Below are positions 13,803 to 41,205 of a stretch of DNA of 64,000 bases, in pieces. The position numbers were made by a program, and so were the translations under genes. The notes beneath the pieces are model-generated. The model was not told where the DNA came from, did no database searches, and was given only the letters and a program-made list of their open reading frames with translations. The DNA is taken from the NCBI RefSeq assembly GCF_040938485.1, contig NW_027271101.1:186001-250000 (forward strand), written 5' to 3'. Source of the stretch: Diadema antillarum. Its lineage: Eukaryota. The first letter of the stretch is position 1, and each line of letters starts with the position of its first letter.

Positions 13803-14563
13803 ATATCAGTTCGGGAAACCCACTCACAAGGGGGGCCCCTCCTTATAAGTAACCCGTCCCCCTTATAAGTAACCCCGTCCCCCTTATAAGTAACCCCCGG
13901 GGCACCCCTTATAAGGAGTCTCCACGCTTTTTTGCAATGCAACGCGAAAATGAAAGGACTGCGGCAATTCGCTTGATTATGTCCATAAAGCTTCACAAGT
14001 TTCCTAGTTACTCACGAAATTTGAGCAAAATCGGTTCGAGGCATCATATCTAAAATCATGGATTTAAATGCGATGTCAAACGACCCATGCGAATGCTGAA
14101 ATGCGAGCGATTACTGGCGTGAGTGTCGCCAGGCGCGCCGGGCGGCAATGCTTGAGTGCAGACGTGGCGACTGAGTACCGGTACATGTACTCAGTCGCCA
14201 CGTCTGCACTCAAGCATTGCCGCGCCGCCGCGCCTGGCGACACTCACGCCAGTAATCGCTCGCATTTCAGCATTCGCATGGGTCGTTTGACATCGCATTT
14301 AAATCCATGATTTTAGATATGATGCCTCGAACCGATTTTGCTCAAATTTCGTGAGTAACTAGGAAACTTGTGAAGCTTTATGGACATAATCAAGCGAATT
14401 GCCGCAGTCCTTTCATTTTCGCGTTGCATTGCAAAAAAGCGTGGAGACTCCTTATAAGGGGTGCCCCGGGGGTTACTTATAAGGGGGACGGGGTTACTTA
14501 TAAGGGGGACGGGTTACTTATAAGGAGGGGCCCCCCTTGTGAGTGGGTTTCCCGAACTGATAT
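13803..14563. repeat. 761-bp near-perfect palindrome (foldback-type element)
   Basis: Arms 13803-14178 and 14187-14563 are reverse complements, with one 4-vs-5-nt bubble (14138-14141 vs 14224-14228) and an 8-nt loop. ATAT lies at both ends. Four CCTTATAAG subterminal repeats per arm. Confidence 0.95.
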
Positions 14564-17999: not shown

Positions 18000-20900
18000 A
18001 TGCAGCAAGCCTTTCGCCAGCTGGAAGAGAGGAACCTCTCCGTTGAGGTCACCCTCATGGAGTGGTCCCCCAAGATGGACCTGATAGCCCTGTCCAATGA
18101 AAATGGGGAGGTGAGCTGATCACAGATCTCTGTAGAAGTTAATTGGATATCTCGTAGGCCAATCGTTTTGAAGCAGCCGTGCCGCCATCTCACCAAGCAC
18201 ATCACCCATGCATTTGTGTACAGAGCTCTCAACATCTTGTGATTGTGATGACAGTCTCTGCTGGAAAATGTTTGCAAGTCCCCATAGAGTGTGCCTGGTA
18301 AGATGGCGGCATGGTGGTTTCACTTGTATGTACGGTTAGAATGAGCCAATGACATATCCAGATAGCTCCTTTAGAGATCAGTGAACCTGATGCACGTGTA
18401 GTAAATTGACTTGCCAGGGATAACTGACTAGTGTCACATAAAACAGTATATTCCTTTTTCCCCCATTTTCTTTTGTTTTAGCCCAAAGAAAACCACCCAT
18501 CTGGAATCTTTGATAATATTTATTACAGTCATTTTATTTATTTTGTGTTATTTGAAAACAGGGTAGTCATTTTAGAGCCCTGTATTCATACAAAACAAAG
18601 ACCAGTATAAAATGGAAACTCAAATATACAAAACCATGGATAAAAGAAAATGTAACTTATCGCATGTTCATTCCAGTTGGCATTAAATAATGTTATCGTT
18701 ATCAATGACACTCCTTCCCAATGGTGACTGGATAACCTCTCAAAGCATTTAGAAAAAAAAATTGCATTCATGTGCGAGTATATGAGTGAGAGAGAGAGAG
18801 CAATGTTGCATGAGAGGAGTAGAAGTAGAGACAGGAATCAGATAAGTTTTAAGCTGAATTGAATTAATCATCAAGTAACTTTTGACCATCTCATCTGGTG
18901 GCCTCAATAGAAACGGAAAAACAACAGCAAACAAACATTCAGCTGTCCTTGTGTCATAAATATGATCTCATGCAATATATGATATGAAGTATGTGTTTGT
19001 TTTCTGTGTGAATGTCATATATTTCATGTTTTCTAAAGAGATACTGTAAAACGAGGAATTTTCGCGTGCATTTTAATTTCGCGAATTTCGCGAGCGCCAA
19101 AATTCGCGAAATTAAAATGCACGTGAAAGCTTTTGTCTACACTACATACATTGAATGCCAGAAGCAATTCGCGAAAATTTCATGCCACGAAAAAGGCTTT
19201 CGACTCCAATTCGCGAAAATTTCATGCCGCGAATATATCATGTTTTACAGTATATTGCAAGACTTGTAATTTTATCAAGCATATCATATTACATTCATTC
19301 TCTAAGACCACAGAATTTTATTTCTTCATGCACTTTTAAAAATAAGAGCAAGTGGGGTTTAAAGAAAAAAAAATCAAATATCACCCATATTGCTTCTGAT
19401 TTCATGGCTTTCATGATCACAGCATAGCATATGAATTTCTTGGCAGGTTTTGTTGCAGCGACTGACGTGGCAACGCCAGCCTATCTGGACCCTGTCTCCA
19501 CCAGGGGAGGAGGAGAGAAAAGAGGTTCGTGCTCTGGCCTGGAGACCCGATGGCAAAGGTCAGTTTACTTTGAGTTTGTAACCTTCTTTTGGAAAGCAGT
19601 ACGATGGTAGTCGTAGGAAGATATTTCATTTTTCATTTCATTTCAATTTATTTTCATATTTCTCACATATATCACAATAAAGTATATGTATAAATATGAA
19701 AATTATACAAAACATAATTTAGATGAGACTTCATCAGAATGTACAAAAGTTTGATTTGGTATAAACATGAGGTCTGTATGCATGCGAATTAAACTGTAGT
19801 CATCGAATGCGAAAAAATATGATGGGGCCTGCGTAAAAGCATTAGCTTGTACAGCCGCAGGTCCCGAGAGTAATCAGATTAGGGGAAGTTTAAAGTACGG
19901 ATGTTTTTTAAGACCAACTATATCTGAGGAAACCGATTTAAAGGGAACGTAAACCCAAAGTACAATGTGGATTGAGTGAAAGCAGCAACATTTGTAGAAC
20001 ACATCAGTGAAAGTTTGAGGAAAATTGGACAATCGATGCAAAAGTTATGAATTGTTAAAGTTTTGTTGTTGGAACCGCTGGATGAGGAGACTACCAAAGG
20101 TTATGACGTATGAGTGGACAACAATATAAAGAAAATATAAAGAAAATTTCGCAAAAATTCATTTTTCACGAAAATTACAAATTCCACCAAATTGATACTG
20201 ACATATGTTAAGGGTAGCAATTATTCCCCCTGCTTTCTGAAAGCGGTTACTCAAGTGCTCTTTCATAATGCTAGAAAAGTGAAATTTTGTTGAATTTCCT
20301 TTATATTTTCTTTGAATTGTTGTCCACTCATACGTCATAACCTCTAGTAGTCTCCTCATCCAGCGGTTCCTACACCAAAACTTTAAAAATTCATAACTTT
20401 TGCATCAATTGTCCGATTTTCCTCAAATTTTCACTGATGTGTTCTACTAATGTTGCTGCTATTACTCAATCCACATTGCACATCCACATTAAATATATGT
20501 CACTAAATAAAAATACAGAAAACAGAAAACAGAAAGCAGAAAACAGAAAGATCACATGTTGCAGCAGTGAACAACAACTGCAGAGATTCAAGGGGTGTGT
20601 TGCAGAGTATAGAAAATGGCGTAACTGTATGTCATAAATACATTTAATAAGTAGAAGGTGGAATAATGAGATTTGTCGTGAATGTAAACAATACCAAAAG
20701 CTCAGGAGTAACATTCCAGCTTGGGTCCTAAAACCAAGCATTCTGTGTGACCATAGTAACCGACAGCTGTCACGCGCGAGAATTTCGATAACCGAGTGGA
20801 ACAATAGGTGCATGAACAGCGCAACAGGCAGACTGTTCAAAAACAGTGTTCATGGTTAGGATCCCGCCGGACTAAGGTGGGATAGACAAGGGGTAACATG

Positions 20901-23900
20901 TAAAGAGCAACAAGAACTATACACTATGCATGCCGTACAATGTAGCTGCTAAGAAGATATTGCTTCAGTTTTCGTTTGAATGAGGTTACAGTGGTACAAC
21001 TTACAAGTTCCATAGGGAGTTCGTTCCAATATTTGGGCCCAGCGAACATAATGGTTTTTTTCGCGAAAATTGTTCGGGTACGTGGAAGGTGATATGCGTA
21101 ACGTTGACGAGTTGGATAATCATGAACTGTATAATTTCTTGTAAACATTTGGGAAAATACGTCTGGTAATTGGCCAGTTGAAAATTGAAACATAAACAGG
21201 CCGACGTTATAATAAAATAACTCGGGAATTTTCAAAATTTGATTACTAACAAAAAGTTCGTTCGTGTGGGATAAATATCCAGTGTGGTTAACAATTCTAA
21301 CAGCGCGTTTTTGTACAAGAAATAACGAATCGATAAGGTTTTTAGAAGCATTTCCCCACACCAGAATCCCATAGTTGAGATAGGGAGATATCAAAATTGA
21401 ATATATGCTCTGTAGAATATTACTTGGAAAATAATAGCTAAGTTTGTTAAGAACCCCGGTATTTTTAGCAATAATTGTGCTTACATAATTAACATGGGTT
21501 CTCCAAGATAAATCACTATCGATATGAAGACCCAAAAATTTTGTACTGTTGACCTGTGACAGATCAATGTTGTTTATCTTGACAGAGAGAGGTAACACAG
21601 ATAGCGAATTACTGAATAACATATACTGAGTTTTATCAATGTTTAAGGATAATTTGTTCGCAAAAATCCAAGATTGGACAGAAACAAGTTCTTTATTTAT
21701 TATGTTTATAAGCGCATCAGGATTTTGATGAGAGAAGAACAAATTTGTATCATCTGCAAAACAAACGAAGGAGAGAATCTTAGAGGAGTTCTGGATATCA
21801 TTAATATATAAAATAAAGAGAAGTGGGCCTAACAAGGAACCCTGTGGAACACCACAAGAAATCAGTTTTGGCTGGGAATCGTGACCGTGAATACTTACAA
21901 ATTGTTTTCTGTTCGTTAAATAATCAGTGAACCATTCTAGCGCCCTTCCCCGAATTCCGTAATGATTTAACTTATAAAGTAAAATGTCATGGTCTATTGT
22001 ATCAAACGCCTTGGAGAAGTCAAGGAAAACACCGACAGTGTGAGAAATATCATCTATAGCATGAGCTATCTTATCAATAAACTTGAGTAATGCGTGAGTT
22101 GTACTATGTTTTTTCCGAAATCCAAATTGAGATTCAGTGAATATTTTTGCCTGAAGAAAAAAATTAAGGGTGCGTTTATACACAAGTCTTTCGAGTATCT
22201 TTGAAAAAGCAGTTAAAAGAGAAATGGGGCGATAATTATTGACAAGGTCTTTTCGCCCTTTTTTAAAAATGGGAACAACTCTGGCTACTTTCATTTTTGA
22301 GGAACTTTACCAGTAGATAAAGATTGATTGAAAATATAAGTAAGAGGCGAAATTATTTCATGAATCACATTTTTTACCAAGAAGTTTGTGATTCCATCAT
22401 ATCCCGAACTTTTTTTATTATTTAACTTATCAACAATCTTTATTATTTCATCTTCGACAATCGGGACAAAAAATAAAGATTCCATATTCCTACTACCCAG
22501 GAAAGAGTGAAATTCTCGCTGCGCTTCAGGAATTTTATCAGCCAGATTTGGCCCAATGTTTACAAAAAAATCATTAAAAACTTCAGCTATATCTATGGGG
22601 TCATCTATGGGGGTCAATATAAGCCCATTATGACTCAAATTCACCCGACCAAATCATATGTGATGCAGCATACGTGTATGGTCCTGCGTGAGGAATGAAA
22701 TTTACTGATTTGTATGATACAAGTTTAGATTCCTTTGATACAAAATTATGTAATGTCTGATTCTATATACAAATATATCATCAATGTTTTGACTCTAAAC
22801 CTTGTTCAGTATCAAATGGCCATTGCTATTAAATGTGTTTTGAATGCATTCATATGACATGGACCAAGGTCAAACACAGGGGGATGGATATAACAGAGAG
22901 TGGAGGAAAGTCATGCTCCTAGTCCTTTATAGGAATTGATATCTTCTGTCAAATTTTTGCATAGAAGGTTATCAAAAGCAGTATGGGAATGCAATAAGGA
23001 GGGGGTTTTAAAATTATATAAAAAACAACAAAACTGTGCAAATTTGATAACCTGTAAAAATATTTCTGTGGTTGCCTGAGTAGTACATTTAAGTATGAGA
23101 GTGATGCATGTACATGCAACATAGGCAGGTAGCAGCTGCATGGAGATACCTCTTGCCAACTATGGGAACATGCACACCTATTATGCTAAGCACATGTAGG
23201 CAGTACAATATGCGCATTCCTGATTGTGACTTAACCACCTGTGAAAAATTTGGAATCTATGGTGTGTTGTGATTATNNNNNNNNNNNNNNNNNNNNNNNN
23301 NNNNNNNNNNNNNNNNNNNNNNNNNNNNNNNNNNNNNNNNNNNNNNNNNNNNNNNNNNNNNNNNNNNNNNNNNNNNNNNNNNNNNNNNNNNNNNNNNNNN
23401 NNNNNNNNNNNNNNNNNNNNNNNNNNNNNNNNNNNNNNNNNNNNNNNNNNNNNNNNNNNNNNNNNNNNNNNNNNNNNNNNNNNNNNNNNNNNNNNNNNNN
23501 NNNNNNNNNNNNNNNNNNNNNNNNNNNNNNNNNNNNNNNNNNNNNNNNNNNNNNNNNNNNNNNNNNNNNNNNNTATTTGTATTACTACTGTTTTTTAACA
23601 TGATGACAATGATAATTGTAATTTTATCCTCTCAGTCCTTGCTGTTGGGTATAGCTCTGGTAAGCTCATTCTGTGCAGTGTTGAGAAGGCAGAGGTGATT
23701 CACACAGCCAACATTGACCAGCCCATTACCACCATGCAGTGGACATCAGCAGTGGACACTGGCCCAAACCTAGAGACCACTGGTCAACAGTCGTCGATCA
23801 CGGCCAAGATAGCCGCATTCTCAGCCTCCTCTGAGGATGGGGCTGAGAAATTCCTGCCCAAATTGCCCTCACTGTCTAAAATGTAAGTAAGCAAAGAAAA

Positions 23901-26900: not shown

Positions 26901-27885
26901 CAAGTATCCCTGCTTTGTGTATAAAGTTGTTACTATACAGAATATGCAACACGAGCTCTCTGTTAAGATTAGACTGCTGCATTTAACACTATTGTTAATT
27001 GCAAATTAGTTGAAACATGCTTTCATTTACACATTTTGAGTTAATGTCAATTTTGAATCGGGTTTAGTGAGGTAAACTTGAATAATTTACACACAAACTT
27101 GAGGCATAATCTACCACTATGGTGTTAAGAAACCTACGTAATTTGTTGAGCTAATGACCATCCTGTTAACAATGACGAGGGGATTTACCATTTGCTAAGT
27201 GTTACATATGTACATGTATCAGGACAATTTTACCCTGGATAAATACCGGATAGTGATAGGGTTAGAGCAAAGATTTGGGTTAGGGTTAGGTTTAGGTTCA
27301 GGATTAGGATTAGGATTAGGGGAAGAGGAACGGGAAAGGTCTTGATTAAGTTTTCATCGCGTAATTGTCCTAGAATTGTATGGTATGTAAAATGTATGCA
27401 TGTATGCATGCATATGCGTGTGTGTGAATACATACATTTGTATGTATGTACATGTATGTGTGCTATCTATGTATCTCTCTGTCTACACTGTCTATANNNN
27501 NNNNNNNNNNNNNNNNNNNNNNNNNNNNNNNNNNNNNNNNNNNNNNNNNNNNNNNNNNNNNNNNNNNNNNNNNNNNNNNNNNNNNNNNNNNNNNNNNNNN
27601 NNNNNNNNNNNNNNNNNNNNNNNNNNNNNNNNNNNNNNNNNNNNNNNNNNNNNNNNNNNNNNNNNNNNNNNNNNNNNNNNNNNNNNNNNNNATTTGGGTC
27701 TAGGGCAATTACCCCCTGGGCAGTCACCCCAGACCCTTCCCTTGACCCAGGCTAACCCTAATCCTAATCCTGAACCTAATCCTAACCTAAACCAAACTCT
27801 AAACCCAAAACCTAACCCTAACCCTCATCTTTACTCTAACCTTGTCACTAATCAGTAATTAGCTGGGGGTGGGGGGGTTAATTGC

Positions 27886-30900: not shown

Positions 30901-33900
30901 GTCCGTTCAGTACTGTACACCACAATCGCAAATTTAGCCACTCATAAATTTGATGGGAAGTCCTGATTCACAAAAGAAAATAAACTCACTAAACATATGG
31001 TATATACAATATTTGACAACTTCCTGCTTAGAACAAAAAACAATGACAAGCAACAAATGCATACACACAGACAAAACACACACACACATGCACACAGAAA
31101 GAAAAAAAATCAGTCTGTATGAAGTCTATGTTATAGTACACATTCGTTCTCAAGCCATTTGTCTGTGCATGTGTGTAAGAAATGGGAGAACATTGATTTA
31201 CTGTATTTTACTCTGGCTCCTGCTTCATATCAAATTTGCCACCAATAGCGGCCTTGCTTTGACTTTGAAGATCTGTAAATTATATTTCTTTTGTTTCAGC
31301 TGTCATTGTCTCTTTTTGAAGTTTGCTTTTATCTGTTACATGTCAAGTTGAAATTTACAGCCTCATCTCCATAAGTAACAACCTACAAAAGTTGAGATTT
31401 AGCTGCATAGAATAAAGTTGATTTTTTCATAAACTTGATGTCTCATACCATGATAAAGTTTTCCCAGATTTGATCACTCACATTCTGTACAAGACTCAGA
31501 TCTCCTCCTTCTCTTCATCAAAATATATTTGTTCTGTTGCACTGACCTCCAGGGTGATTGAGCACAGTCTGAAGAACTTCAAGGCCTTCTTCCGCTGGCT
31601 CTACGTCGTCTTGATGCAGCTCCTGGAGGAACCAATACAGCAGAGTGTTAGCAGAGTGAGTTTTGTTAGCAGAGTGAGTTTTGTTAGCAGAGTGAGTTTT
31701 GTTAGCAGAGTGAGTTTTGTTGGCAGAATGAGTTGTGTTAGCAGAGTGAGTTTTGTTAGCAGAGTGAGTTGTGTTAGCAGAGTGAGTTGTGTTAGCAGAG
31801 TGAGTTGTGTTAGCAGAGTGAGTTGTGTTAGCAGAGTGAGTTGTGTTAGCAGAGTGAGTTGTGTTAGCAGAGTGAGTTGTGTTAGCAGAGTGAGTTGTGT
31901 CAGCAGAGTGAGTTGTGTCAGCAGAGTGAGTTGTGTTCGCAGAGTGAGTTGTGTTAGCAGAGTGAGTTTTGTTAGCAGAGTGAGTTGTGTCAGCAGAGTG
32001 AGTTGTGTCAGCAGAGTGAGTTGGGTCAGCAGAGTGAGTTGGGTCAGCAGAGTGAGTTGTGTCAGCAGAGTGAGTTGTGTTAGCAGAGTGAGTTGTGTTA
32101 GCAGAGTGAGTTGTGTTAGCAGAGTGAGTTGTGTTAGCAGAGTGAGTTGTGTTAGCAGAGTGAGTTGTGTTAGCAGAGTGAGTTTTGTTAGCAGAGTGAG
32201 TTGTGTTAGCAGAGTGAGTTGTGTCAGCAGAGTGAGTTGTGTTAGCAGAGTGAGTTGTGTTAGCAGAGTGAGATGTGTCAGCAGAGTGAGTTGTGACTTC
32301 AATCTTGTGCTGTTGTTTGTGTATTGTTATTGTTCAGCCTCTTTTGTGATACTGTAAACAAGATATGTTCACGGCATAAATTTTTCGGGAATCAGCATGA
32401 AATCTTTCTGCAAATTTCCACTGGCATTTTATGCATATGGTGTAGACAAAAACTTTCATACATGTGCATTTTGATTTCACAGATCTTGGCTCTAGCGAAA
32501 TTTGTAAAATTAAAATGCATGCAAACATTGTCCTGTAATATTTGCTCATCTTTTACTCCGAGTCAATCTCATATATTGAGATGTTAGGTAGATCAGATTA
32601 ATACTTATGTAGATCTCTCTTCTCCTTGTAGCTACATATAATTGCATTTGACTCTATAATTTGCATTAATATACTGCATGCATCCTTTCTGTATGTCATC
32701 TTATGTTTTCACATATTTTGCTCATTTTGTTTTCTTATGTTGTTTTTGTTTCCTCATAGCTAAGGGTAATATTGACCTTAGAAACAGAGTTAGCATATTT
32801 TGGCTGCATTCACATGCTGACCATTGTGGTGTTCTATTTTTTTATTTTTTTATTTTTTTTTGGGGGGGGGGAAGGATTGTCAATGTTACCCATTTGTTTT
32901 TGTCTCTTTAACTTACCATGCTTCAAATGAGTAGCACTACCATGAGGACTCCTGTCATATTATCTGTTGCCATGACAATGATGCTCAGTCCTATATGCAA
33001 TGGAAATTGGTCTCCATTTTAGCTTTCATTTTTTACCCTCTGGATCTAGTGGTGTTATGCCATTTAAGTTTGTGGCATGATAATATTCAATTGTATAAGC
33101 AATAATTTGTGGCTTGACTTTCTAGCCCTTGCTTTTATTTTGTGTTGACAGATGTACCAACGAGATATCAACTTTGTTGCCGACTTTCTAACAGAGAACT
33201 TCACAGATGTAAGTATTTGTAAATATTCTCCTAAATGTAATGATGCACATTACCTCTAGTCTATGCAGAGTATGAAATTATGATCTCATCAAGGAGAATT
33301 TTGCTGTCAACCAAATTTGCCAGATTTGAAGCCAATTGACTCTATTTCATCTTTTACCACAGTTTCAGGATGTCATACTGTTTGATTGATGGTTGATTGG
33401 TTGGGCTTGAACGATATGCAAAGGTCAAATATCATTGGTTTTAGAATGAAGAGAGCAGTAATGACCAATTAATTAAGAATAACGAGGACTTAAATTCTGT
33501 GCTGAAAGCATCAACACCCTTATATTAAGGCTCTCACGACACTGAATATAATAAACATTAAGATGTTGATAAAGATACTAAAATGTAGACAATTGAAGAA
33601 ACAAAGAGCTAAGTTCAATTGATGCATACATGTCGGATGAAATATTAACTTACACAAAATATTATCTCTCCATGTATTTGATTTGTCTGCATTGCATGAC
33701 TGTCAGAGGTATTTTGGAAGAGGAATTTAGGTGCAAGGAAAGGCCAGTAACTTGTTATACTACTCTTGCAAAATGTCAGCATCTTTTAGATGTGCAACAA
33801 ATTATCAGCTGGTGTATGTAGACAATGCTGTGGCCAGACCTCCCAACCATTCTGAAATTTGAGGAAAGAATCTGAATTTTGACCATTCCCAGCTCTCATT

Positions 33901-36900
33901 TCAGTAAGAGTTCCCTATATTTCTTGATTATTTCACCTCTCACTTCTGTGGGAATTACTCTTTCTTTCCTGCTGTGGAGCCAAATCATCCCTGTTTTTCA
34001 GTCAGAAAGGTTGGGAGGTCTGTGTGGCTCTGGAGGGACTACTTATCATGAACCAACTTGTATTTGTATCTCAGACAAGTATCTTGTCTACTTTTTGTCT
34101 GGTCCCAAAGGAACCGAGTTTAGAAGGGACTAAGTCGGGTTTCACCTTGGAGAGGGTTGGCCAGTACCTGCGCAAGGAGAACCTCCAGTTTCCCATTAAC
34201 TCCGCCCCGGACTCCTGGCAGGACCTGGTCAACGCCACGCCCAGCCTCCGCGAGAGTGACCTGCTGTTTCCATGGCAGCGGGAGAAGTCCCTGAGCCAAC
34301 TTCACGACCTGGTCAAGGAAAGGGTTGATCATGCCCTGAGCAGACCACCTGTAAGTTAACACCAGCAGATTGAAACCAACAAAAAGCATGACAAAGAGAC
34401 ATTGTGGCCATTTCAGATTTTTTTTCTGTGATTTGATTTGATTAGATGCAATTCCTGCATTTTTTCACAAAAAAATCTAACATCACAAGGAAATCTTCAA
34501 AAAATGATTATATATTGAAAAATACTAGTATACTAATCATACAGGTAAAAAAATAGTATGTCATTGAAGTAAAGCATTATGAACAAATGCAGGACACTGC
34601 TGTCGTAAGCAAAGGCTTCGTTTTAATGGCAGCCTCTATATGGAGCAATATCTTCATTGAGTTTCAGATTTCCTGAGTACACAATTGTAAAGAAATGTAC
34701 ATCAAGCTTAGATATAGTCCTGAGAACATCTGTATATACGAATGAAATGAATACATCAGCGCTGCACGCTGGCACTGGTCCGACGGTCCCTGACCAGTGG
34801 AAATCACTTTTGGACCAGTAACTCTTTTTCAGGAATTCACCAGGAAAAAAAAAAAAATGGAAAAACTGGGTACCTACTGGTCTGACAGACAGGTCAGACC
34901 AGTAGAAATGGGTTAGTGCGCAGCCCTGAATATATCAAATGTATATTATATGTAAATTTCAACTCATACTGGTGTGTTGTTGGTGAAAAAGGATGGATGT
35001 GGTTTTTGTCTCTCTCTGTCTCTCTCTCTGGCCCATTCTTGCTTGGTAGTAATACTTGATGAATTTTGTTTAAAACTTTGGGAATTTTCAAAAATTAGTC
35101 AGTGCAGATTTGAGCTGAGTTAGTGAGTGATTATCACAAGACCACTTGGAGGTGTAATCTCTATGCCTGACAAATGTGGAAGATCTGCATTTCCTCCCAC
35201 TTTTCATGCTATATACCAACAAAGACAGTTTTACTTTTCTTGAAAATGAAAATGAAGTCCCTTTTGTTTGCAACATTGGTTCCCGTCTCATCGCAGCATG
35301 TTGGAGGCGAGTCCCTCACCTGCCGAGAGTCCCACCGTCTTGACCACCGGTCAGAAACAGATGACCAGGAGCACTGGATATTCTCGCAGTAAGCTTCAAC
35401 CAATCCTATTCATATGCAAGAGCAAAGTTTCCACTAACACATCCTGTGTATTATGTGTAATTACAGTTGATGGTAAGACTGATATTCATTGTAATTCAGC
35501 GGGTAACTATGTCCTGAACAAATTAGCAATGACTCACATCCTTTGATTATACAGAACTTGAATTTTTTTTTTCATTTTCGTGTAAAAAGGGTCATTCACA
35601 TCACTGTTGTGAACAATTGTAGAAATTGATTTTTTTCAAGCTTTCAGACACTGCAGGCTGTAAAAGAAAAAAGAAGATAAACCCTCTACTGTAAATAGAT
35701 CTTACATATTTTTGTATCCCATGTACACAAACCTAAAGGTCACTTCATTCAAAGTGTGCATTGCATTGCTGGTTGTTTTCTTCTTCAATCAACCTGCAGA
35801 CAAGGTAACCAGGACCTTGGTATCTTGTACACGGTGAAGAGTGTAGCGCCCTCACCGACCAAGAGTATTCACTTGACAAGGCAGTACGCCAAGCCAGACA
35901 GGTGAGTTGTCCTGTGTTTTGTGTATGTATATCAGTCAGGATACCAGATGATAACAATGATGATGATTATTATGATAATAATGCTTTAAAAAAATAGTGT
36001 TTAATTATAAGGCCAAGCAACAAAAGAAAGTAGTTTCTCGTCCTCTCGTTCTCTTTTTCACTTCCATGAACTGTTTGATATGGCAAAATATGTAAACTCT
36101 AATTTTGTTTGTCTGCATTATGTCATTGATCTCATTTTGATTGATTTTAGTTTATGTTCTTTGTAACCACTGATCTTCTATCGGAAAGAATAAATGAACG
36201 AATGAACGAAAGAAGTCGTAGTGTACATCTGACTTTGGTGCTGTGTCAATCTTTTCACTATTTACTTTTAAAAATACCCATCAAAAGATTTAAAAAGTTG
36301 TCTTTCATATCCCCATTCACATCATTTTTGAGTTGCCAGTTTGACTTTTTCTTGATGTTTAGTATATTTGCTATCCAAAAAAGATTTGAAAGTCACCTAA
36401 TATTCTGATCGTGATGTCATTCATGCATTGCGATATAGAATCTAGTGTGATAGTGTGTATTCACCATCGGTGTACTGTACCACTAACCAAGAATCCTGTG
36501 AATGTAACCAGCCGCTATGTAATACTGTGGGCTTGGAAGGTGCACTGTTGAGAACATTTTAAAGTACGTTGTCAATGAACAAGTCTTTGAGCTCATGCAT
36601 TTGTACTCCAGTATGCATCATGAGCCTCACTCTTGTGCTGCTATTGCGCTAGGATGCTGGTGCCATTTCCCACAACAAATGATTTTCAAACATGTACAGT
36701 ATGTCCCAAAAAAAATTACAATCCACTTTTCGCATTGATAACACCCAATATGATTAAACCGTCTAAATGCTACTTCAGTGTCTTATAATATGACATCTTA
36801 GCTCTATTTTGCAGAAAACCCCATTCAATTTGGTTGAGTGGTCACAGAGAAATGCGGATTGTTGTAAAGCATGTCATGAGTCTGATTCTTCCAAGTTCAA

Positions 36901-39900
36901 CACTTGGATGCTCTTGGAAATGCAAATTAATGTGTGAACACAATAGACAAAACTTGGAGGGAAGAGATTTCTGACATGCTCTACAAAATTTCTCATTTCT
37001 CTTTGACCACTGAAGCAAATCGAATGGGGTTCTCTGTAAGATGTGGGCAACGAGTTATAGTTTCATACACTGAAATTGTTTTTGGATTGATTCACTATTT
37101 TTAAAGCTATCATTGCAGAGGGTACCGTTGTATTTTTTTTTTTTTTTGGACATACGGTACAGTCTCACTCTATAACATTTCACAGCCTAAACAACTTGCA
37201 TTTGTGTCCCTAAAGTCCATTGGAAGGTGCTTGAAGACACTGTTTGTAGATTGTAGATATGCGTTCTAGGTTGTTCTCAGCCTTAAAGCATCCATAGATG
37301 ATGATTGATATTCCTTTGTTGCGTTTCCATTTGTTTAGAACGAAAGACCACACAGACATTGTCGCCTTGAACTTTGGTAGTCTTGGTTCATCAGACCCCG
37401 ACGAGAGTATCGTGTCACTGGCAGCTGACAGGTAAAACTATCAAGTGATGTAGAGATTTCTTTTTGCACATGCTTTCTTGATATTTAATGTCAATGTCTT
37501 TCTGTCAGTCACTCTATCTATTTACCTCTACATATTTATCCATGTAGCTGTCTGTTAATTTATTTATTTCTATGAATTTAGCTATCTGTCCTTCCATCTA
37601 TCAATATTTATCTGCTGGTCTCTCCATCTTTTCATTTATCTCTGTATATATTGGTGTATTTGTATGTATCTATCTTTCTTTCTGTCTATCAATTTCTCAC
37701 CTCTACTTCTACCTAGGTATGTTGATATATTGTGATTTTTGAGGTTTCAATTTTCTTCACTTTGTCTCTCTCTAACACATGAAATTTGTCAGATCGCAAC
37801 TGCTGATCTGTAATTTAACAATTTTGGAGTTTGGGTAAGTGTTCCAAGTTCATCGTGTCACTGCCAGCAACCAGGGATAGCCTTGTGGTAGTGTCACTGC
37901 CCGGAAAGCAGTAGATGACAGGTTTGAGTCATGTGGTTCCTTTTTTCTGACGTGTTTGTTGAATTACACATCAACAGTTGCGATCTTACAAAATTTCAGA
38001 GGGAGACAAATTGAAGAAAATTGAAACCTCGACCTTCACCCCTCCACTTACTATTCTCTTGCAATGTGATTTTTGTCACCTCATTCATTTGATATACTCT
38101 GTTTTATTGTAATCTTTCAGCCATCTAGTCCTGGATGCAGCTTTTTATGGTGACCACTCATTGTCCATCCTCCTACAAGAGGTCAAGGAAGACGGTGCTG
38201 GGGGCAGCCCCAAGCCTGTCCTCTGCCAGCTCTCTCTGGAAGCCCTCCAGGGTCAGGCCGACTTCACCCCACTGTCGGAGGTCAAAGGTCACCTCTCTGA
38301 GGTCACTAATCTGTAAGCATAAGACCTGCAAAGGCTCTTTGTTGTTCCCTTGATGGACTTCCACTCTATGCCTATGTGTTGATATCTTTTCTTTTGCCTT
38401 TATTGCTACTGTCTTGGTTTGACAAATGGTGTCTAACAAAAGAAACTTTCAAGGGTATATGTGTACATAGTAAAACATGCATACTGAGTAAAAAATACAA
38501 CAGTATAGTATATTTACATAATTGATTGTACATTATCCATGCATATGGTATGTACCACTTGGCAAGTGTACCAATAAGGGTTCCTGACTGTACAAATATG
38601 TATTTTCATTTCAACATATTTGATATGTTTTCTTCATGTTCAATGCATTATTTTAGGTAAGTTTCTGTTAGTTAGATTTCAAACTTTTTTGCTGACATAA
38701 GAAGTCACTACACATTTAAACAATACTTGATAAAATGGTACTTGCCACAACTTTGCTTGATTCATGGACACATTTGGGCTTGTGCTCTAATTGACTTACT
38801 GTTCTATGCATTGTGTGGTGTGCCTACTTCATACTGTTTCCTAAGTATTACTAGTTACCTCAGGTGAGCCGCAATAGAGCTAAAGCGACTGTTTTGCTGT
38901 TGAATGGCCTTGATCTGGCCCTGTTACTGCTGAGAAAACCTAAATGCTGATAATCTTCAGCTCCAGCATGAATGACATTGAGGTGTTAGCATCTTGTTGT
39001 TGAAAATCTCAACTAATTGGGCTCATGGGGGGTTGACAAGCACTCCAATCTGATATCGAATTACACACTCTGTTCCCAGCCCTACATTTGATGCTGGCCC
39101 ACTGGTGATGTTCCGGAGAATGGATAACATGAGGGCATGTCGTCTGGCGGTCAGCGGGTCCAGGAAGGTTGCTTGTGTGGTGAGTACCTGCACCCCCCCC
39201 CCCCTCCCTACTTAACCACACACTTCCACCTACCCGATATCTGCCTGTGACAAAAATAATTGAATCAGAGTCTGAGGAGCCAAGACTACTTGAGGTCGTG
39301 CAATACTTGTGTGGTCTTTGGTCTGTGAAAGTGAAAACAAACAACAGAAATAATGAGGATAAACAAGAATCCCTTTGCATGCAGTAACCAGTAACATTGT
39401 CATCTCTATGGGAATTCCCCTTTCTCAGGTAAATCTTGATAGATTTTTACAGATGCTTTTTGGGGTGGAGTGACATAGTTATAATCAAATCCCATTTGCT
39501 CCTGTGTGTTGGAAACAAAGGAGAAAAAACAAGGAAAAGTAGAAATTACGCGGTGCATAATATATGTCCCCGCCGGAAGTAGCATTTAGTAGCAAAATGT
39601 ACAATATAGGTAAAAAGATGAAGGTCAAAGGTCAAAGAAGTCAAAGGTCAAAATTCTATGTAGAAGTTTTGAAGCCCTCACCTAGTGCCATCACATAAAG
39701 CAAACGGAATCGAAATCGGGTTAGAAATGGCGAAAGAGTAGCATTTGGTAGCAAAATGTACAATACAGGTCAAAAATCAAGGTCAAAGGTCAAAGAAGTC
39801 AAAGGTCAAAATTCTGTGTAGAAGTTTTGAAGCCCTCACCTAGTGCCATCACTTAAAGCAAACGGAATTGAAATCGGGTTACAAATGGCGAAGGAGTAGC

Positions 39901-41205
39901 ATTTTGTAGCAAAATGTACAATATAGGTCAAAAATCAAGGTCAAAGGTCAAAGAAGTCAAAGGTCAAAATTCTGTGTAGAAGTTTTGAAGCCCTCACCTA
40001 GTGCCATCATGTAAAGCAAACGGAATCAAAATCGGGTTAGAAATGGCGAAGGAGTAGCATTTTGTAGCAAAATGTACAATATAGGTCAAAGGTCAAGGTC
40101 AAAGGTCACAACTGAAATTCTGTATAGAAGTTTCAAAGCTCCCATGTAGTGCTATCATATAAAGCAAACAGAATCAAAATCGGGTTAGAAATGGCGAAGG
40201 AGTAGCATTTTGAACATTTTGATCACACACGGACGCACACACGGACGGACACACGGACGGACGGACGGACACACGGACGGACGGACACACGGACATACAC
40301 ACGTACGGAGCCCGTTTCATAGTCCCCTGCTCGAACTCGTTCGGCGGGGACAATAAAAAAGCAAAAATACTTAACATTGCATGAAAAAAATTTATCTATA
40401 ATACCATACTGGATTACAGTATCACAGATTACTCCTTCCTGATCAGATATTCTTTTTTATATATGAATGAATACTTCACAAAACCGATGCAAAGTTGAAG
40501 TGCAGACCCAGTGTAGACTGTCATTACACAGAGATAATAACTGTTACCTTTTTTTTTTTTTTTGGTACTATTTTTGTATGTATGTGTGTGTGTGTGTGTG
40601 TATGTGTGTGTGTTTTTTGTTGGTTTTTTTTTAACAGGAAATACAGCAGGTTTCATTGAAAATGCTGGTTTTCCCAAATTGTATTACTATACATGTCTAT
40701 TGCAAGGAAGGTAAAACCACCAAACAGTATGCCTTTTCAACATTCAGAATGCTACAATGCTCTTTACAGGATTGGCATTCCTGATTACTTGCCAGTCAGT
40801 CAGATCATTTAGTTTGAAGGGTAGAGCTTTTCCACATTCTCTTCATTTCAATCTGTTTACCAGTAAAGTCGATGCCAAAGTCCGACAGAAGTGTTGCATG
40901 TTTTAACTCTGCACCAGATGAAGGCCACATTCAGGTGCTTAAAAGTCAATCAAACTGATCCAAACTAATGAGTTATATACCATACCATACCAGACTGGGA
41001 GTGTCTGAGAGCTCTGTAGAGATAGCAAAGCCTCACTCTGTGTCGTATTTCTTTGTTGTGACAGCTGTTCTCCAACCAGAGGCGGGTACGCCTGTTCGAT
41101 ATGGACGCCGAGGATGAAGGGGAGGACGAGGACGATGAAGAGGAGGCGGAGCTCGACGACTCCTCCATGCTGGTGGCAGAAGATACTGGTAATGCCGACG
41201 ACTGA
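18000..41205 (+). CDS. ANAPC4: Anaphase-promoting complex subunit 4 (APC4), 20 coding exons, about 795 aa
   Basis: Exons 18000-18110, 19447-19558, 23636-23882, 24333-24398, 24970-25078, 25800-25910, 26391-26474, 27998-28084, 28839-29026, 29652-29752, 30439-30490, 31553-31655, 33152-33208, 34111-34350, 35297-35388, 35800-35901, 37339-37431, 38121-38312, 39080-39179, 41065-41205. All GT-AG, phases consistent, 2388 nt. Motifs recognised from human APC4: WSPKMDLIALSN, LAWRPDGK, FLPKLPSL, DEFLQLLLWGKAS, KGLKKLDQS, LFHLSELKGMA, VGSFMLKANELLQVI, KNFKAFFRWLY, ERVGQYL, LDAAFY, SGSRKVACV, RVRLFDMD plus an acidic tail. Confidence 0.97.
19044..19250. mobile_element. Abundant TA|CTGTAAAA...TTTTACAG|TA MITE family (Tc1/mariner-like); best copy
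   Basis: TIR and TA TSD, with internal TTTCGCG/CGCGAAA repeats. Related copies at about 7753-7918, 30768-30955, 32352-32540, 42810-43032, 46798-47080 (with a nested piggyBac-like mini-MITE), 47450-47673 and 63593-63798. Confidence 0.8.
19625..19900 (-). mobile_element. 3' end of an L2/Crack-type LINE (or LINE-tailed SINE)
   Basis: Minus strand reads GGACCTGCGGCTGTACAAGCTAATGCTTTTACGCAGGCCCC ... AATAAATTGAAATGAAATGAAAAATGAAAT: a stem-loop, a poly(A) signal and a (TGAAA)n tail. Confidence 0.55.
19942..20478. mobile_element. Kolobok-like long-TIR MITE, right end truncated (related copy about 43150-43540)
   Basis: TTAA|AGGGAACG left end. Long diverged inverted arms (GTAGAACACATCAGTGAAAGTTTGAGGAAAATTGGAC / GTCCGATTTTCCTCAAATTTTCACTGATGTGTTCTAC). 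Confidence 0.65.
20924..22610 (-). mobile_element. 5'-truncated non-LTR retrotransposon (L2/CR1 group, Crack/Daphne-like) RT, one frameshift
   Basis: ORF 20924-22294 has YRPISLL, QFGFR, FLDFSKAFDTIDH, GVPQGSLLGPLLF, FADDT, KFLGLHID and YWNELP. The upstream ORF 22291-22644 supplies the linker (FNDFFVNIG, KKSSGYDGI). A one-base deficit in the A-run at 22294-22298 separates the two. No endonuclease domain. Antisense in ANAPC4 intron 2. Confidence 0.93.
23277..23573. other. Assembly gap (297 N)
   Basis: Run of N. Confidence 1.
25428..25607. mobile_element. Tc1/mariner-type MITE
   Basis: TA|CAGTCAAACC ... GGTTTGACTG|TA with internal CTATAGAC repeats. Confidence 0.75.
27220..27355. repeat. Element containing degenerate (TTAGGG)-like repeats
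   Basis: AGGACAATT..GGGTTAGGGTTAGGTTTAGG..AATTGTCCT. A related inverted copy lies at 27692-27932. Confidence 0.55.
27497..27691. other. Assembly gap (195 N)
   Basis: Run of N. Confidence 1.
27692..27932. repeat. Element containing degenerate (CCCTAA)-like repeats and a poly-G tract
   Basis: GGGCAATTACCCCC..CTAACCCTAATCCTAA..ACCTAACCCTAACCC..TAATTGCCC(G)nTAATCGTCCT. Confidence 0.55.
31647..32294 (+). repeat. 18-bp minisatellite, 36 units, spanning the ANAPC4 exon 12 / intron 12 junction
   Basis: Unit GT(T/C)AGCAGA|GTGAGTT(G/T)T; 648 bp = 36 x 18. The first unit contains the exon-12 donor at 31655/31656. Confidence 0.98.
34757..34928. mobile_element. hAT-like MITE
   Basis: CAGCGCTGCACGCT ... 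AGTGCGCAGCCCTG ends with GACCAGT subterminal repeats. The TSD is only imperfect. Confidence 0.5.
36697..37157. mobile_element. Tc1/mariner-type MITE
   Basis: TA|CAGTATGTCCCAAAAAAAATTACA ... TGTATTTTTTT..TTGGACATACGG|TA. Confidence 0.7.
37758..38010. mobile_element. Diverged MITE
   Basis: GAAATTTGTCAGATCGCAACTGCTGATCTGTAATT pairs imperfectly with AATTACACATCAACAGTTGCGATCTTACAAAATTTC. Confidence 0.55.
39528..40356 (+). mobile_element. Complete HINE/pearl-like element with internal tandem array of about 158 bp
   Basis: Starts AACAAG. Subterminal IR TGTCCCCGCCG (39565-39575) / CGGCGGGGACA (40342-40352). Core units start at 39579, 39738, 39896, 40054 and 40202. (ACGG)n at 40228-40307. 3' hairpin GTCCCC..GGGGAC followed by an A-rich flank. 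Confidence 0.8.

What the first reader, a model, noticed from the sequence alone, without database searches (positions are those of the whole stretch)
31647..32294. The ANAPC4 exon-12 splice donor is amplified into a 36-unit in-frame array of 5' splice sites
Seen: the 18-bp unit is exactly the last 9 exonic plus the first 9 intronic bases (GTT AGC AGA|GTGAGT TGT). By my count 34 units keep GTGAGT, one has GTGAGA and one has lost the GT. The unit length is a multiple of 3 and the frame has no stop through the array ((VSRVSC/F/W)n). Exon 13 starts in phase 0, so use of any downstream donor would give an in-frame APC4 with 6n extra residues (up to 210) and no premature stop. Established: nearby competing 5' splice sites can be alternatively selected, and U1 snRNP binds GURAGU sites. 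Inference: VNTR length could tune splicing, act as a U1 sink, or generate a ladder of isoforms of an essential cell-cycle subunit. Alternatively, strict use of the first donor would make this a natural test of splice-site choice.
Basis: partly seen in the sequence, partly recalled or inferred. Interest (0 to 1): 0.8.

Follow-up and report, generated by a model that had tools for sequence, protein, structure and literature searches.

The report
Splice-donor minisatellite in urchin ANAPC4
In the sea urchin Diadema antillarum, an 18-base stretch spanning the exon 12/intron 12 boundary of the cell-cycle gene ANAPC4 has been copied 36 times (47 on the other haplotype), making a row of identical splice donors; this arrangement is already known from several human genes, where only the first one to three donors are used.

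Summary
The array has 36 units of 18 bp at 31647-32294: 34 carry GTGAGT, one GTGAGA and one ATGAGT. The frame stays open through it, and exon 13 starts in phase 0 at 33152.

The genome is not a vertebrate. The window is Diadema antillarum (long-spined sea urchin), assembly GCA_040938485.1.

The array is not an assembly artefact. The second retained haplotype of the same individual, assembled from HiFi reads, has it at the same place with 47 units and a different interior. The sister species D. setosum has exactly one unit, so the array arose in the D. antillarum lineage by amplifying the boundary itself.

All three RefSeq models (both D. antillarum haplotypes and D. setosum) are 795 aa and join ...SVSR|MYQRD, which is donor 1. 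APC4 proteins from other animals have the same length at this junction. No protein carrying VSRVSC inserts turned up in any of the four collection searches.

I could not test transcripts directly, because no RNA run was listed.

The kind is already described. Human F7, IFI6 (6-16), CBS, LMNB2 and PDGFA have minisatellites whose first unit spans an exon/intron boundary, and only the first one to three donors are used (PMC1557585).

Verdict: a real, polymorphic intronic VNTR and a new member of a known kind. The proposed isoform ladder and U1 sink remain untested and have no support here. An unchecked first-reader note in this scan reports a similar five-donor array at GFM1 in the same genome.

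The parts
31553..31655 (+). ANAPC4 coding exon 12 (residues 424-457 of XP_071491646.1, ending ...EEPIQQSVSR)
   Evidence: Matches human APC4 residues 407-433 in the PDB at E 4e-6. The RefSeq protein P0165 maps onto it exactly. The acceptor AG is at 31551-31552.
31656..31661 (+). Authentic (first) 5' splice site, AGA|GTGAGT
   Evidence: This junction gives ...SVSR|MYQRD, as in all three Diadema RefSeq models. It also gives the same protein length as other echinoderm and vertebrate APC4 proteins. In D. setosum it is the only donor at the homologous position.
31647..32294 (+). 18-bp minisatellite of 36 units. Unit 1 is the last 9 exonic plus the first 9 intronic bases. Units 2-36 are intronic pseudo-donors.
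   Evidence: TRF output, per-unit table, pattern search with 36 matches against 0.02 expected, and variant-repeat map.
31719..31736 (+). Unit 5, GTTGGCAGA|ATGAGTTGT, where the donor GT is lost. Both haplotypes share it at the same position.
   Evidence: Both variant maps begin BBBBEB.
32259..32276 (+). Unit 35, with the weakened donor GTGAGA
32277..32294 (+). Last unit, GTCAGCAGA|GTGAGTTGT, identical to the single ancestral-type copy in D. setosum and followed by the conserved flank GACTTCAATCTTGT
   Evidence: Alignment A1 and the single D. setosum match.
32295..33151 (+). Non-repetitive remainder of intron 12, ending with the acceptor ttgtgttgacag
   Evidence: Downstream of the conserved post-array flank (which aligns to about 32352), roughly 32353-32576 finds no match on the other haplotig and 32577-33449 aligns at only 82%.
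33152..33208 (+). ANAPC4 coding exon 13 (residues 458-476, MYQRDINFVADFLTENFTD), phase 0 at both ends

Best explanation
This is a lineage-specific, length-polymorphic intronic minisatellite. It arose when the 18 bp spanning the ANAPC4 exon 12/intron 12 boundary were duplicated in tandem and then expanded by slippage or unequal exchange. This happened in the Diadema antillarum lineage after its split from D. setosum. The first copy holds the authentic donor. The other 35 copies (46 on the other haplotype) lie inside intron 12 and are removed with it. The normal product is therefore the 795-aa APC4, and changes in array length are tolerated. The downstream copies are intact pseudo-5' splice sites. 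By analogy with the human boundary-spanning minisatellites, they are outcompeted by the most upstream site, probably through exon definition or 5'-to-3' selection. At most, the second and third donors would yield rare in-frame +6 or +12 residue forms.

Shown here: the structure, the origin, the polymorphism, and the junction used in the gene models.

Inferred: that donor 1 dominates in vivo, and the mechanism by which it is chosen.
For: Structure.

Identity: the window is 100% identical to D. antillarum GCA_040938485.1 contig JBFRCO010000213.1. P0165 (XP_071491646.1) maps exactly onto 20 coding exons of the window.

Origin: D. setosum has exactly one unit at the boundary. Its left flank matches the end of exon 12 and its right flank matches the sequence that follows the D. 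antillarum array. Other urchin APC4 proteins read ...QQSISK|MYQRD at the same length, so the exon end predates the array.

Polymorphism: the second contig, JBFRCO010001252.1, has 47.2 units. It shares the first six units and the 3' flank with the window, but its interior differs. PMC13511894 states that this assembly retains both haplotypes of one individual and rests on HiFi reads.

Donor use: all three RefSeq models are single 795-aa products that use donor 1. The annotation pipeline used 12 same-species RNA-seq runs (PMC13511894). No insert-bearing protein was found.

No sign of selection on the pseudo-donors: variants fall in the donor hexamer about as often as elsewhere in the unit (rough count of 4 of about 14 distinct variant types, against one third expected).

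Precedent: in F7, LMNB2 and PDGFA only the first donor is used, and in IFI6 and CBS the first three (PMC1557585).
Against: I saw no transcript reads. No RNA run was listed, so read laying could not be used. Gene models can follow protein homology, and this annotation records few alternative isoforms overall (36,155 coding transcripts for 33,123 genes, PMC13511894). The absence of annotated isoforms is therefore weak evidence.

The downstream donors have the same nine bases as the authentic one, and their use would not trigger nonsense-mediated decay, so minor isoforms are plausible.

Experiments with duplicated strong 5' splice sites have sometimes favoured the downstream copy (the opposing results are discussed in PMC1557585). 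All experimental precedents are mammalian.

That the two contigs are alleles is inferred from the published description of the assembly and from 93-99% identity. It was not shown for this locus.
Confidence: 0.8

Rival explanations
1. IFI6-type alternative donors. Besides donor 1, the next one or two donors (31674, 31692) are used at a low but constant level. This would give APC4 forms with 6 or 12 extra residues (VSFVSR repeats) between R457 and M458.
For: Units 1-4 are identical, including positions +7 to +9. The frame is open and exon 13 is in phase 0. IFI6 and CBS use the first three donors of comparable arrays (PMC1557585). In the AlphaFold model the junction lies in a three-residue linker between helices 453-456 and 460-473, where a short insert might be tolerated (pLDDT about 75 locally).
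Against: No such isoform appears in the RefSeq models of either haplotype or in the protein collections. F7, LMNB2 and PDGFA use only the first site.
Confidence: 0.25
2. Many donors along the array are used, so VNTR length sets a ladder of APC4 isoforms with up to 210 (or 276) extra residues.
For: There are 34 identical AGAGTGAGT donors, all in frame.
Against: The gene models and ortholog lengths fit donor 1 only. No known boundary minisatellite uses donors beyond the third (PMC1557585). The two haplotypes differ by 11 units and in many interior variants, including R to G in 10 units, which suggests no coding constraint. Exons of 300-750 nt would be unusual for this gene, whose exons 12-14 are 103, 57 and 240 nt.
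Confidence: 0.03
3. Regulatory U1 platform. The 34-43 GUGAGU sites bind U1 snRNP within the intron, so array length tunes splicing efficiency, transcript retention or premature polyadenylation of ANAPC4.
For: Each unit has six contiguous positions complementary to the U1 5' end (plus established knowledge of U1 pairing). The intronic VNTR of ABCA7 is reported to affect splicing (PMC5954066, title and abstract only).
Against: No data bear on this. D. setosum manages with one unit. The 36 and 47 alleles coexist in one animal. Variants destroy donors about as often as expected by chance.
Confidence: 0.07
4. Assembly artefact, or an exonic coding repeat.
For: Long perfect arrays can be mis-assembled, and the frame is open.
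Against: Two independently assembled contigs carry the array with different interiors. They were built from HiFi reads of mean length 6.8 kb, which span an array of 650-850 bp. No APC4 from any species has the repeat in its protein.
Confidence: 0.01

Closest known systems
Human F7 intron 7 minisatellite (37-bp VNTR, 5-9 copies; Borensztajn et al. 2006, PMC1557585)
   Same: The first monomer spans the exon/intron boundary, so the authentic donor is followed by pseudo-sites of identical sequence. Copy number is polymorphic. Only the most upstream donor is used physiologically, although the pseudo-sites are functional when tested.
   Different: The F7 unit is 37 bp, not a multiple of 3, so most pseudo-sites would shift the frame. 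F7 has 5-9 copies against 36-47 here. It is a mammalian coagulation gene, and its donor choice was shown by experiment, which has not been done here.
Human IFI6 (6-16) intron 2 minisatellite (Turri, Cuin and Porter 1995, as summarised in PMC1557585)
   Same: A long array of reiterated donors (the authentic site plus 25 pseudo-sites) that starts at an exon/intron boundary. Use of extra donors gives in-frame products. From my own memory of that paper, which is not held in the library, the unit is 12 nt and adds 4 residues per step.
   Different: In IFI6 the two nearest pseudo-sites are used constitutively. Here no such transcripts are known. The unit here is 18 bp, with more copies, in an essential cell-cycle gene of an echinoderm.
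Human CBS intron 13 31-bp VNTR, LMNB2 100-bp repeat and PDGFA 81-bp intron 4 repeat (listed in PMC1557585)
   Same: These minisatellites reiterate an exon/intron junction. They use either the authentic donor alone (LMNB2, PDGFA) or the authentic donor plus two more (CBS).
   Different: Their units are longer, and most are out of frame or of unknown frame. All are mammalian.
Intronic VNTRs that modulate splicing without reiterating a splice site (ABCA7 intron 18, TERT intron 6; PMC5954066, PMC11830802)
   Same: They are length-polymorphic intronic tandem repeats close to splice sites.
   Different: Those arrays do not copy the donor. An effect of length on splicing is documented for them and not for this array.

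Membership tests
Exon/intron-boundary-spanning minisatellite (F7 / IFI6 / CBS / LMNB2 / PDGFA type) | Head-to-tail array of a minisatellite-sized unit (about 10-100 bp) | tested here: met
   18 bp x 36.2 copies, 96% matches, no indels. The second haplotype has 47.2 copies.
Exon/intron-boundary-spanning minisatellite (F7 / IFI6 / CBS / LMNB2 / PDGFA type) | The first monomer contains the authentic exon/intron junction, so the donor sequence recurs in the intron | tested here: met
   Unit 1 is 31647-31664, with the junction at 31655|31656. The junction is fixed by an exact mapping of the RefSeq protein, by ortholog length and by the single-copy state in D. setosum.
Exon/intron-boundary-spanning minisatellite (F7 / IFI6 / CBS / LMNB2 / PDGFA type) | Variable copy number between alleles (VNTR) | tested here: met
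   36 and 47 units on two contigs of one individual's assembly, with different interior variant maps. That the contigs are alleles is inferred from PMC13511894 and from 93-99% identity.
Exon/intron-boundary-spanning minisatellite (F7 / IFI6 / CBS / LMNB2 / PDGFA type) | Only the most upstream donor, or the first two or three, is used in mature mRNA | not testable with these tools
   No RNA run was listed. The indirect evidence is that all three RefSeq models use donor 1 and no insert-bearing protein was found.
In-frame alternative 5' splice-site ladder producing protein isoforms | Unit length is a multiple of 3 and the frame is open in phase with the downstream exon | tested here: met
   18-bp unit, frame open 31422-32354, exon 13 in phase 0. 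The frame is also open through the 47-unit allele.
In-frame alternative 5' splice-site ladder producing protein isoforms | Transcripts or proteins that contain extra units | tested here: inconclusive
   None in the RefSeq cluster (three members, all 795 aa). None among 517 APC4 relatives or shorter fragments, and none in the search with the read-through ORF. Raw RNA reads could not be examined.
Exonic coding tandem repeat | The repeat is part of the mature coding sequence in this species or its relatives | tested here: not met
   The 795-aa models exclude the repeat. APC4 proteins from echinoderms to mammals have no insert at this junction.
U1 snRNP decoy or sponge element | Many U1-complementary sites, with U1 binding shown and an effect on RNA fate | not testable with these tools
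   The sequence requirement is met (34 GTGAGT). Binding and effect need experiments.

The most novel reading that the evidence does not exclude
The array is more than a passenger. In D. antillarum some of the 34-43 identical in-frame donors are used, or they load U1 snRNP, so that VNTR length (36 against 47 within a single animal) changes the isoform mix or the output of an essential APC/C subunit. That would make this the longest natural series of competing identical 5' splice sites with a phenotypic readout, and the first outside mammals.
Probability: 0.08. Interest if true: 0.65.

Novelty: new member of a known kind. Interest (0 to 1): 0.35.

Why it matters
How the spliceosome chooses among identical neighbouring 5' splice sites is still debated. 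The candidate explanations are 5'-to-3' scanning, exon definition and proximity to the 3' splice site.

The natural test cases studied so far are a handful of human genes with 5-26 repeated donors. This locus adds a non-mammalian case with these features:
- 34-43 intact, identical donors at a fixed 18-nt spacing.
- An open frame, so products from downstream donors would escape nonsense-mediated decay and be visible.
- A heterozygous individual with 36 and 47 units.
- A sister species with a single donor as the ancestral control.

For genome annotation it is also a reminder that such arrays can mislead splice-site predictors.

If donor 1 is used exclusively, as expected, the result is confirmatory rather than surprising.

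Tried and rejected
- RNA reads. The look-up of sequencing runs (kind rna, window:31400-41300) was first busy and then listed no run. With hindsight a shorter stretch covering one gene might have passed the one-twentieth word threshold.
- Word search with the 311-aa read-through ORF. It found only an unrelated repeat protein from a bird.
- Word search with P0165:377-536, aimed at transcript-derived fragments. It found no Diadema fragment.
- The look-up of encoding contigs for the Lytechinus pictus protein P0047. It is not on record, so no third urchin genus could be compared at the DNA level.
- RNA folding of exon 12 plus the array. The z-score is -6.7, but the ensemble is diffuse (MFE frequency 0, centroid -78.8 against MFE -240.4 kcal/mol). 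Any GU-rich array pairs with itself out of register, so I do not count this as evidence that the donors are masked.
- Turri et al. 1995 (PMC306954) is not held in the library. Details of IFI6 come from PMC1557585 and, where marked, from memory.
- The vertebrate context I had at first assumed was rejected. The closest proteins are echinoid, and the DNA is 100% identical to a D. antillarum contig.
- Spliced model. I did not build or search a joined spliced model. Exons were searched by reference one at a time, and full-length comparisons used proteins returned by the tools.
- Masked stretches. Locus L003 is the same contig as the window and holds letters where the window is masked (N at 23277-23573 and 27497-27691). 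I did not read, print or use those stretches. The whole-locus TRF of the other haplotig listed repeats along the entire locus, and I made no use of any that lie opposite the masked stretches.

Full report
**What is there**

The window carries a near-perfect tandem array at 31645-32295: period 18, 36.2 copies, 96% matches, no indels. It is the strongest repeat in the 64 kb.

Thirty-four units carry GTGAGT after the bar. Unit 5 has ATGAGT and unit 35 has GTGAGA. The unit occurs nowhere else in the window: 36 matches against 0.02 expected, all inside the array.

The exon frame runs open from 31422 to 32354, while the other two frames hit a stop in every unit.

**The gene and the organism**

The open frame before the array encodes VIEHSLKNFKAFFRWLYVVLMQLLEEPIQQSVSR. 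This matches human APC4 residues 407-433 in solved APC/C structures (E about 4e-6).

A search with exon 14 (34111-34350) returned an 802-aa APC4 (P0002). A word search with that protein showed the nearest relatives to be sea urchins, not vertebrates. One of them, Diadema antillarum XP_071476965.1 (P0049), reads exactly ...EEPIQQSVSR|MYQRDINFVADFLTENFTD....

Its 90% cluster has three members, all 795 aa: two from D. antillarum and one from D. setosum. The locus of the second D. antillarum protein (P0165, XP_071491646.1; contig JBFRCO010000213.1 of GCA_040938485.1) is 100% identical to window 16000-43205. P0165 maps exactly onto 20 coding exons of the window. Exon 12 is 31553-31655 (residues 424-457) and exon 13 is 33152-33208 (residues 458-476), with a phase 0 junction.

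**Which donor is the real one**

Three lines of evidence point to the first donor (31655|31656).

- All three RefSeq models use it.
- With it, the protein has the same length at this junction as APC4 from other urchins (...QQSISK|MYQRD), other echinoderms and vertebrates.
- In D. setosum the homologous position holds the only donor (see the next section).

The donor itself is ordinary for this gene. It has a full GTRAGT match on the intron side and a non-consensus A at position -1, like several other donors of the gene.

**Origin**

The D. setosum locus (L002, chromosome OZ188203.1) has exactly one copy of the 18-mer, GTCAGCAGA|GTGAGTTGT, at the exon 12/intron 12 boundary, and no tandem repeat there.

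Its left flank aligns with the end of D. antillarum exon 12. Its right flank (GACTTCAATCTTGT...) aligns with the sequence immediately after the D. antillarum array (alignment A1).

The array is therefore 35 (or 46) extra copies of the boundary itself, gained in the D. antillarum lineage. The last unit in the window still has the D. setosum sequence.

**Polymorphism and assembly quality**

The other D. antillarum contig (L001, JBFRCO010001252.1) is 93-99% identical to the window along the gene. It carries the array at the same place with 47.2 units.

Coding each distinct unit variant as a letter gives these maps:

| Haplotype | Units | Variant map |
|---|---|---|
| Window | 36 | BBBBEBAAAAAAAADDHBADFFDDAAAAABAADAID |
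| L001 | 47 | BBBBEBBAACABBAACABACCCCCCCCAAAAGDJGAAAAKLMANADA |

The first six units are the same, including the GT-less unit 5, and so is the 3' flank. The interiors differ.

The published description of this assembly says it retains both haplotypes of one individual: 1.75 Gb against a haploid estimate of about 703 Mb, with 84.4% of BUSCO genes duplicated. It rests on PacBio HiFi reads of that individual (PMC13511894; mean read length 6.8 kb in the preprint). Reads of that length span a 650-850 bp array, so an artefact is very unlikely. The animal is most likely a 36/47 heterozygote.

GT is kept in 35 of 36 units in the window and in 43 of 47 in L001. Variants fall within the donor hexamer about as often as elsewhere in the unit. 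I see no sign that the pseudo-donors, or the peptide they would encode, are under selection.

**Is the array used in mRNA?**

I could not look at reads. None was listed, which is not the same as none existing.

The indirect evidence is as follows.

- The NCBI annotation of this assembly used 12 same-species RNA-seq runs, 274.5 million reads in all (PMC13511894). It yields one 795-aa product per haplotype, using donor 1.
- The read-through ORF finds no relative in 5.8 billion proteins.
- No APC4 or APC4 fragment with an insert at this junction was found.

This evidence is weak for rare isoforms, because the annotation records only about 1.09 coding transcripts per gene.

If a downstream donor were used, the insert would fall between R457 and M458. 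In an AlphaFold model (mean pLDDT 77.8) this is a three-residue linker between a short helix (453-456) and helix 460-473. It lies after the long helix 401-446 of the helical domain. A short insert there is not obviously destructive. An insert of 200-276 residues rich in Val, Ser, Arg and Cys would be another matter.

**What is known**

This arrangement is a described class. Borensztajn et al. (PLoS Genet 2006, PMC1557585) list human genes in which a minisatellite's first monomer spans an exon/intron boundary.

| Gene | Array | Donors used |
|---|---|---|
| IFI6 (6-16) | authentic donor plus 25 pseudo-sites | authentic plus the two nearest |
| CBS, intron 13 | 15-20 repeats | authentic plus two |
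| LMNB2 | 10-15 repeats of 100 bp | authentic only |
| PDGFA | 16-18 repeats of 81 bp | authentic only |
| F7, intron 7 | 5-9 repeats of 37 bp | authentic only |

[quoted passage not shown] As the first usable site is moved further downstream, exon skipping rises.

The Diadema array fits this class on every feature I could test. It differs in having more copies, an in-frame unit like IFI6, and a non-mammalian host. An earlier, unchecked first-reader note in this scan (s1-229802) reports a five-donor array after GFM1 exon 17 in the same genome, so this locus may not be the only one.

**Verdict**

The best explanation, at about 0.8, is a young, polymorphic, probably neutral intronic VNTR whose first donor does the work. 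An IFI6-like minor use of donors 2-3 is a live possibility (about 0.25, and compatible with the main reading). A full ladder (about 0.03) or a U1-platform function (about 0.07) has no support. The locus is a new member of a known kind. Its value is as a clean natural test case, and public RNA-seq from this species would settle the question directly.

Noticed in passing
window 39578-40212: A 158-bp tandem repeat (4.1 copies, 91% matches) lies in the last ANAPC4 intron, followed by a 24-bp CACACACGGACGGA-type repeat at 40224-40309. The other haplotig's alignment skips roughly window 39546-40352, so this block appears absent or strongly diverged there.
   Followed up: partly
window 19625-22616: About 3 kb of intron 2 has no counterpart in the other haplotig: L001 positions 3413 and 3410 abut window 19624 and 22617. 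This is a large heterozygous indel, possibly a transposon. Together with other intron differences it makes the gene 23.2 kb here against 19.3 kb on the other contig.
   Followed up: no
window 32353-33449: The unique part of intron 12 just downstream of the array is far more diverged between the two haplotypes than the neighbouring introns. There is no match for about 32353-32576 and 82% identity for 32577-33449, against 98-99% nearby. The cause could be elevated mutation or old haplotypes around the minisatellite.
   Followed up: no
window 31638-31658 and L002 13384-13404: The ancestral boundary already held a short direct repeat, CAGCAGAG ... CAGCAGAG, 11 bp apart in D. setosum. Such a repeat may have favoured the first slippage, although its spacing does not match the 18-bp period.
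   Followed up: no
If true, minisatellites that span exon boundaries recur in this repeat-rich genome.
   Followed up: no
window 13841-13897 and 14469-14525: Two 21-bp tandem arrays (2.8 copies each) are reverse complements of each other. They lie within the 761-bp palindrome that another first-reader note (s1-224683) describes.
   Followed up: no
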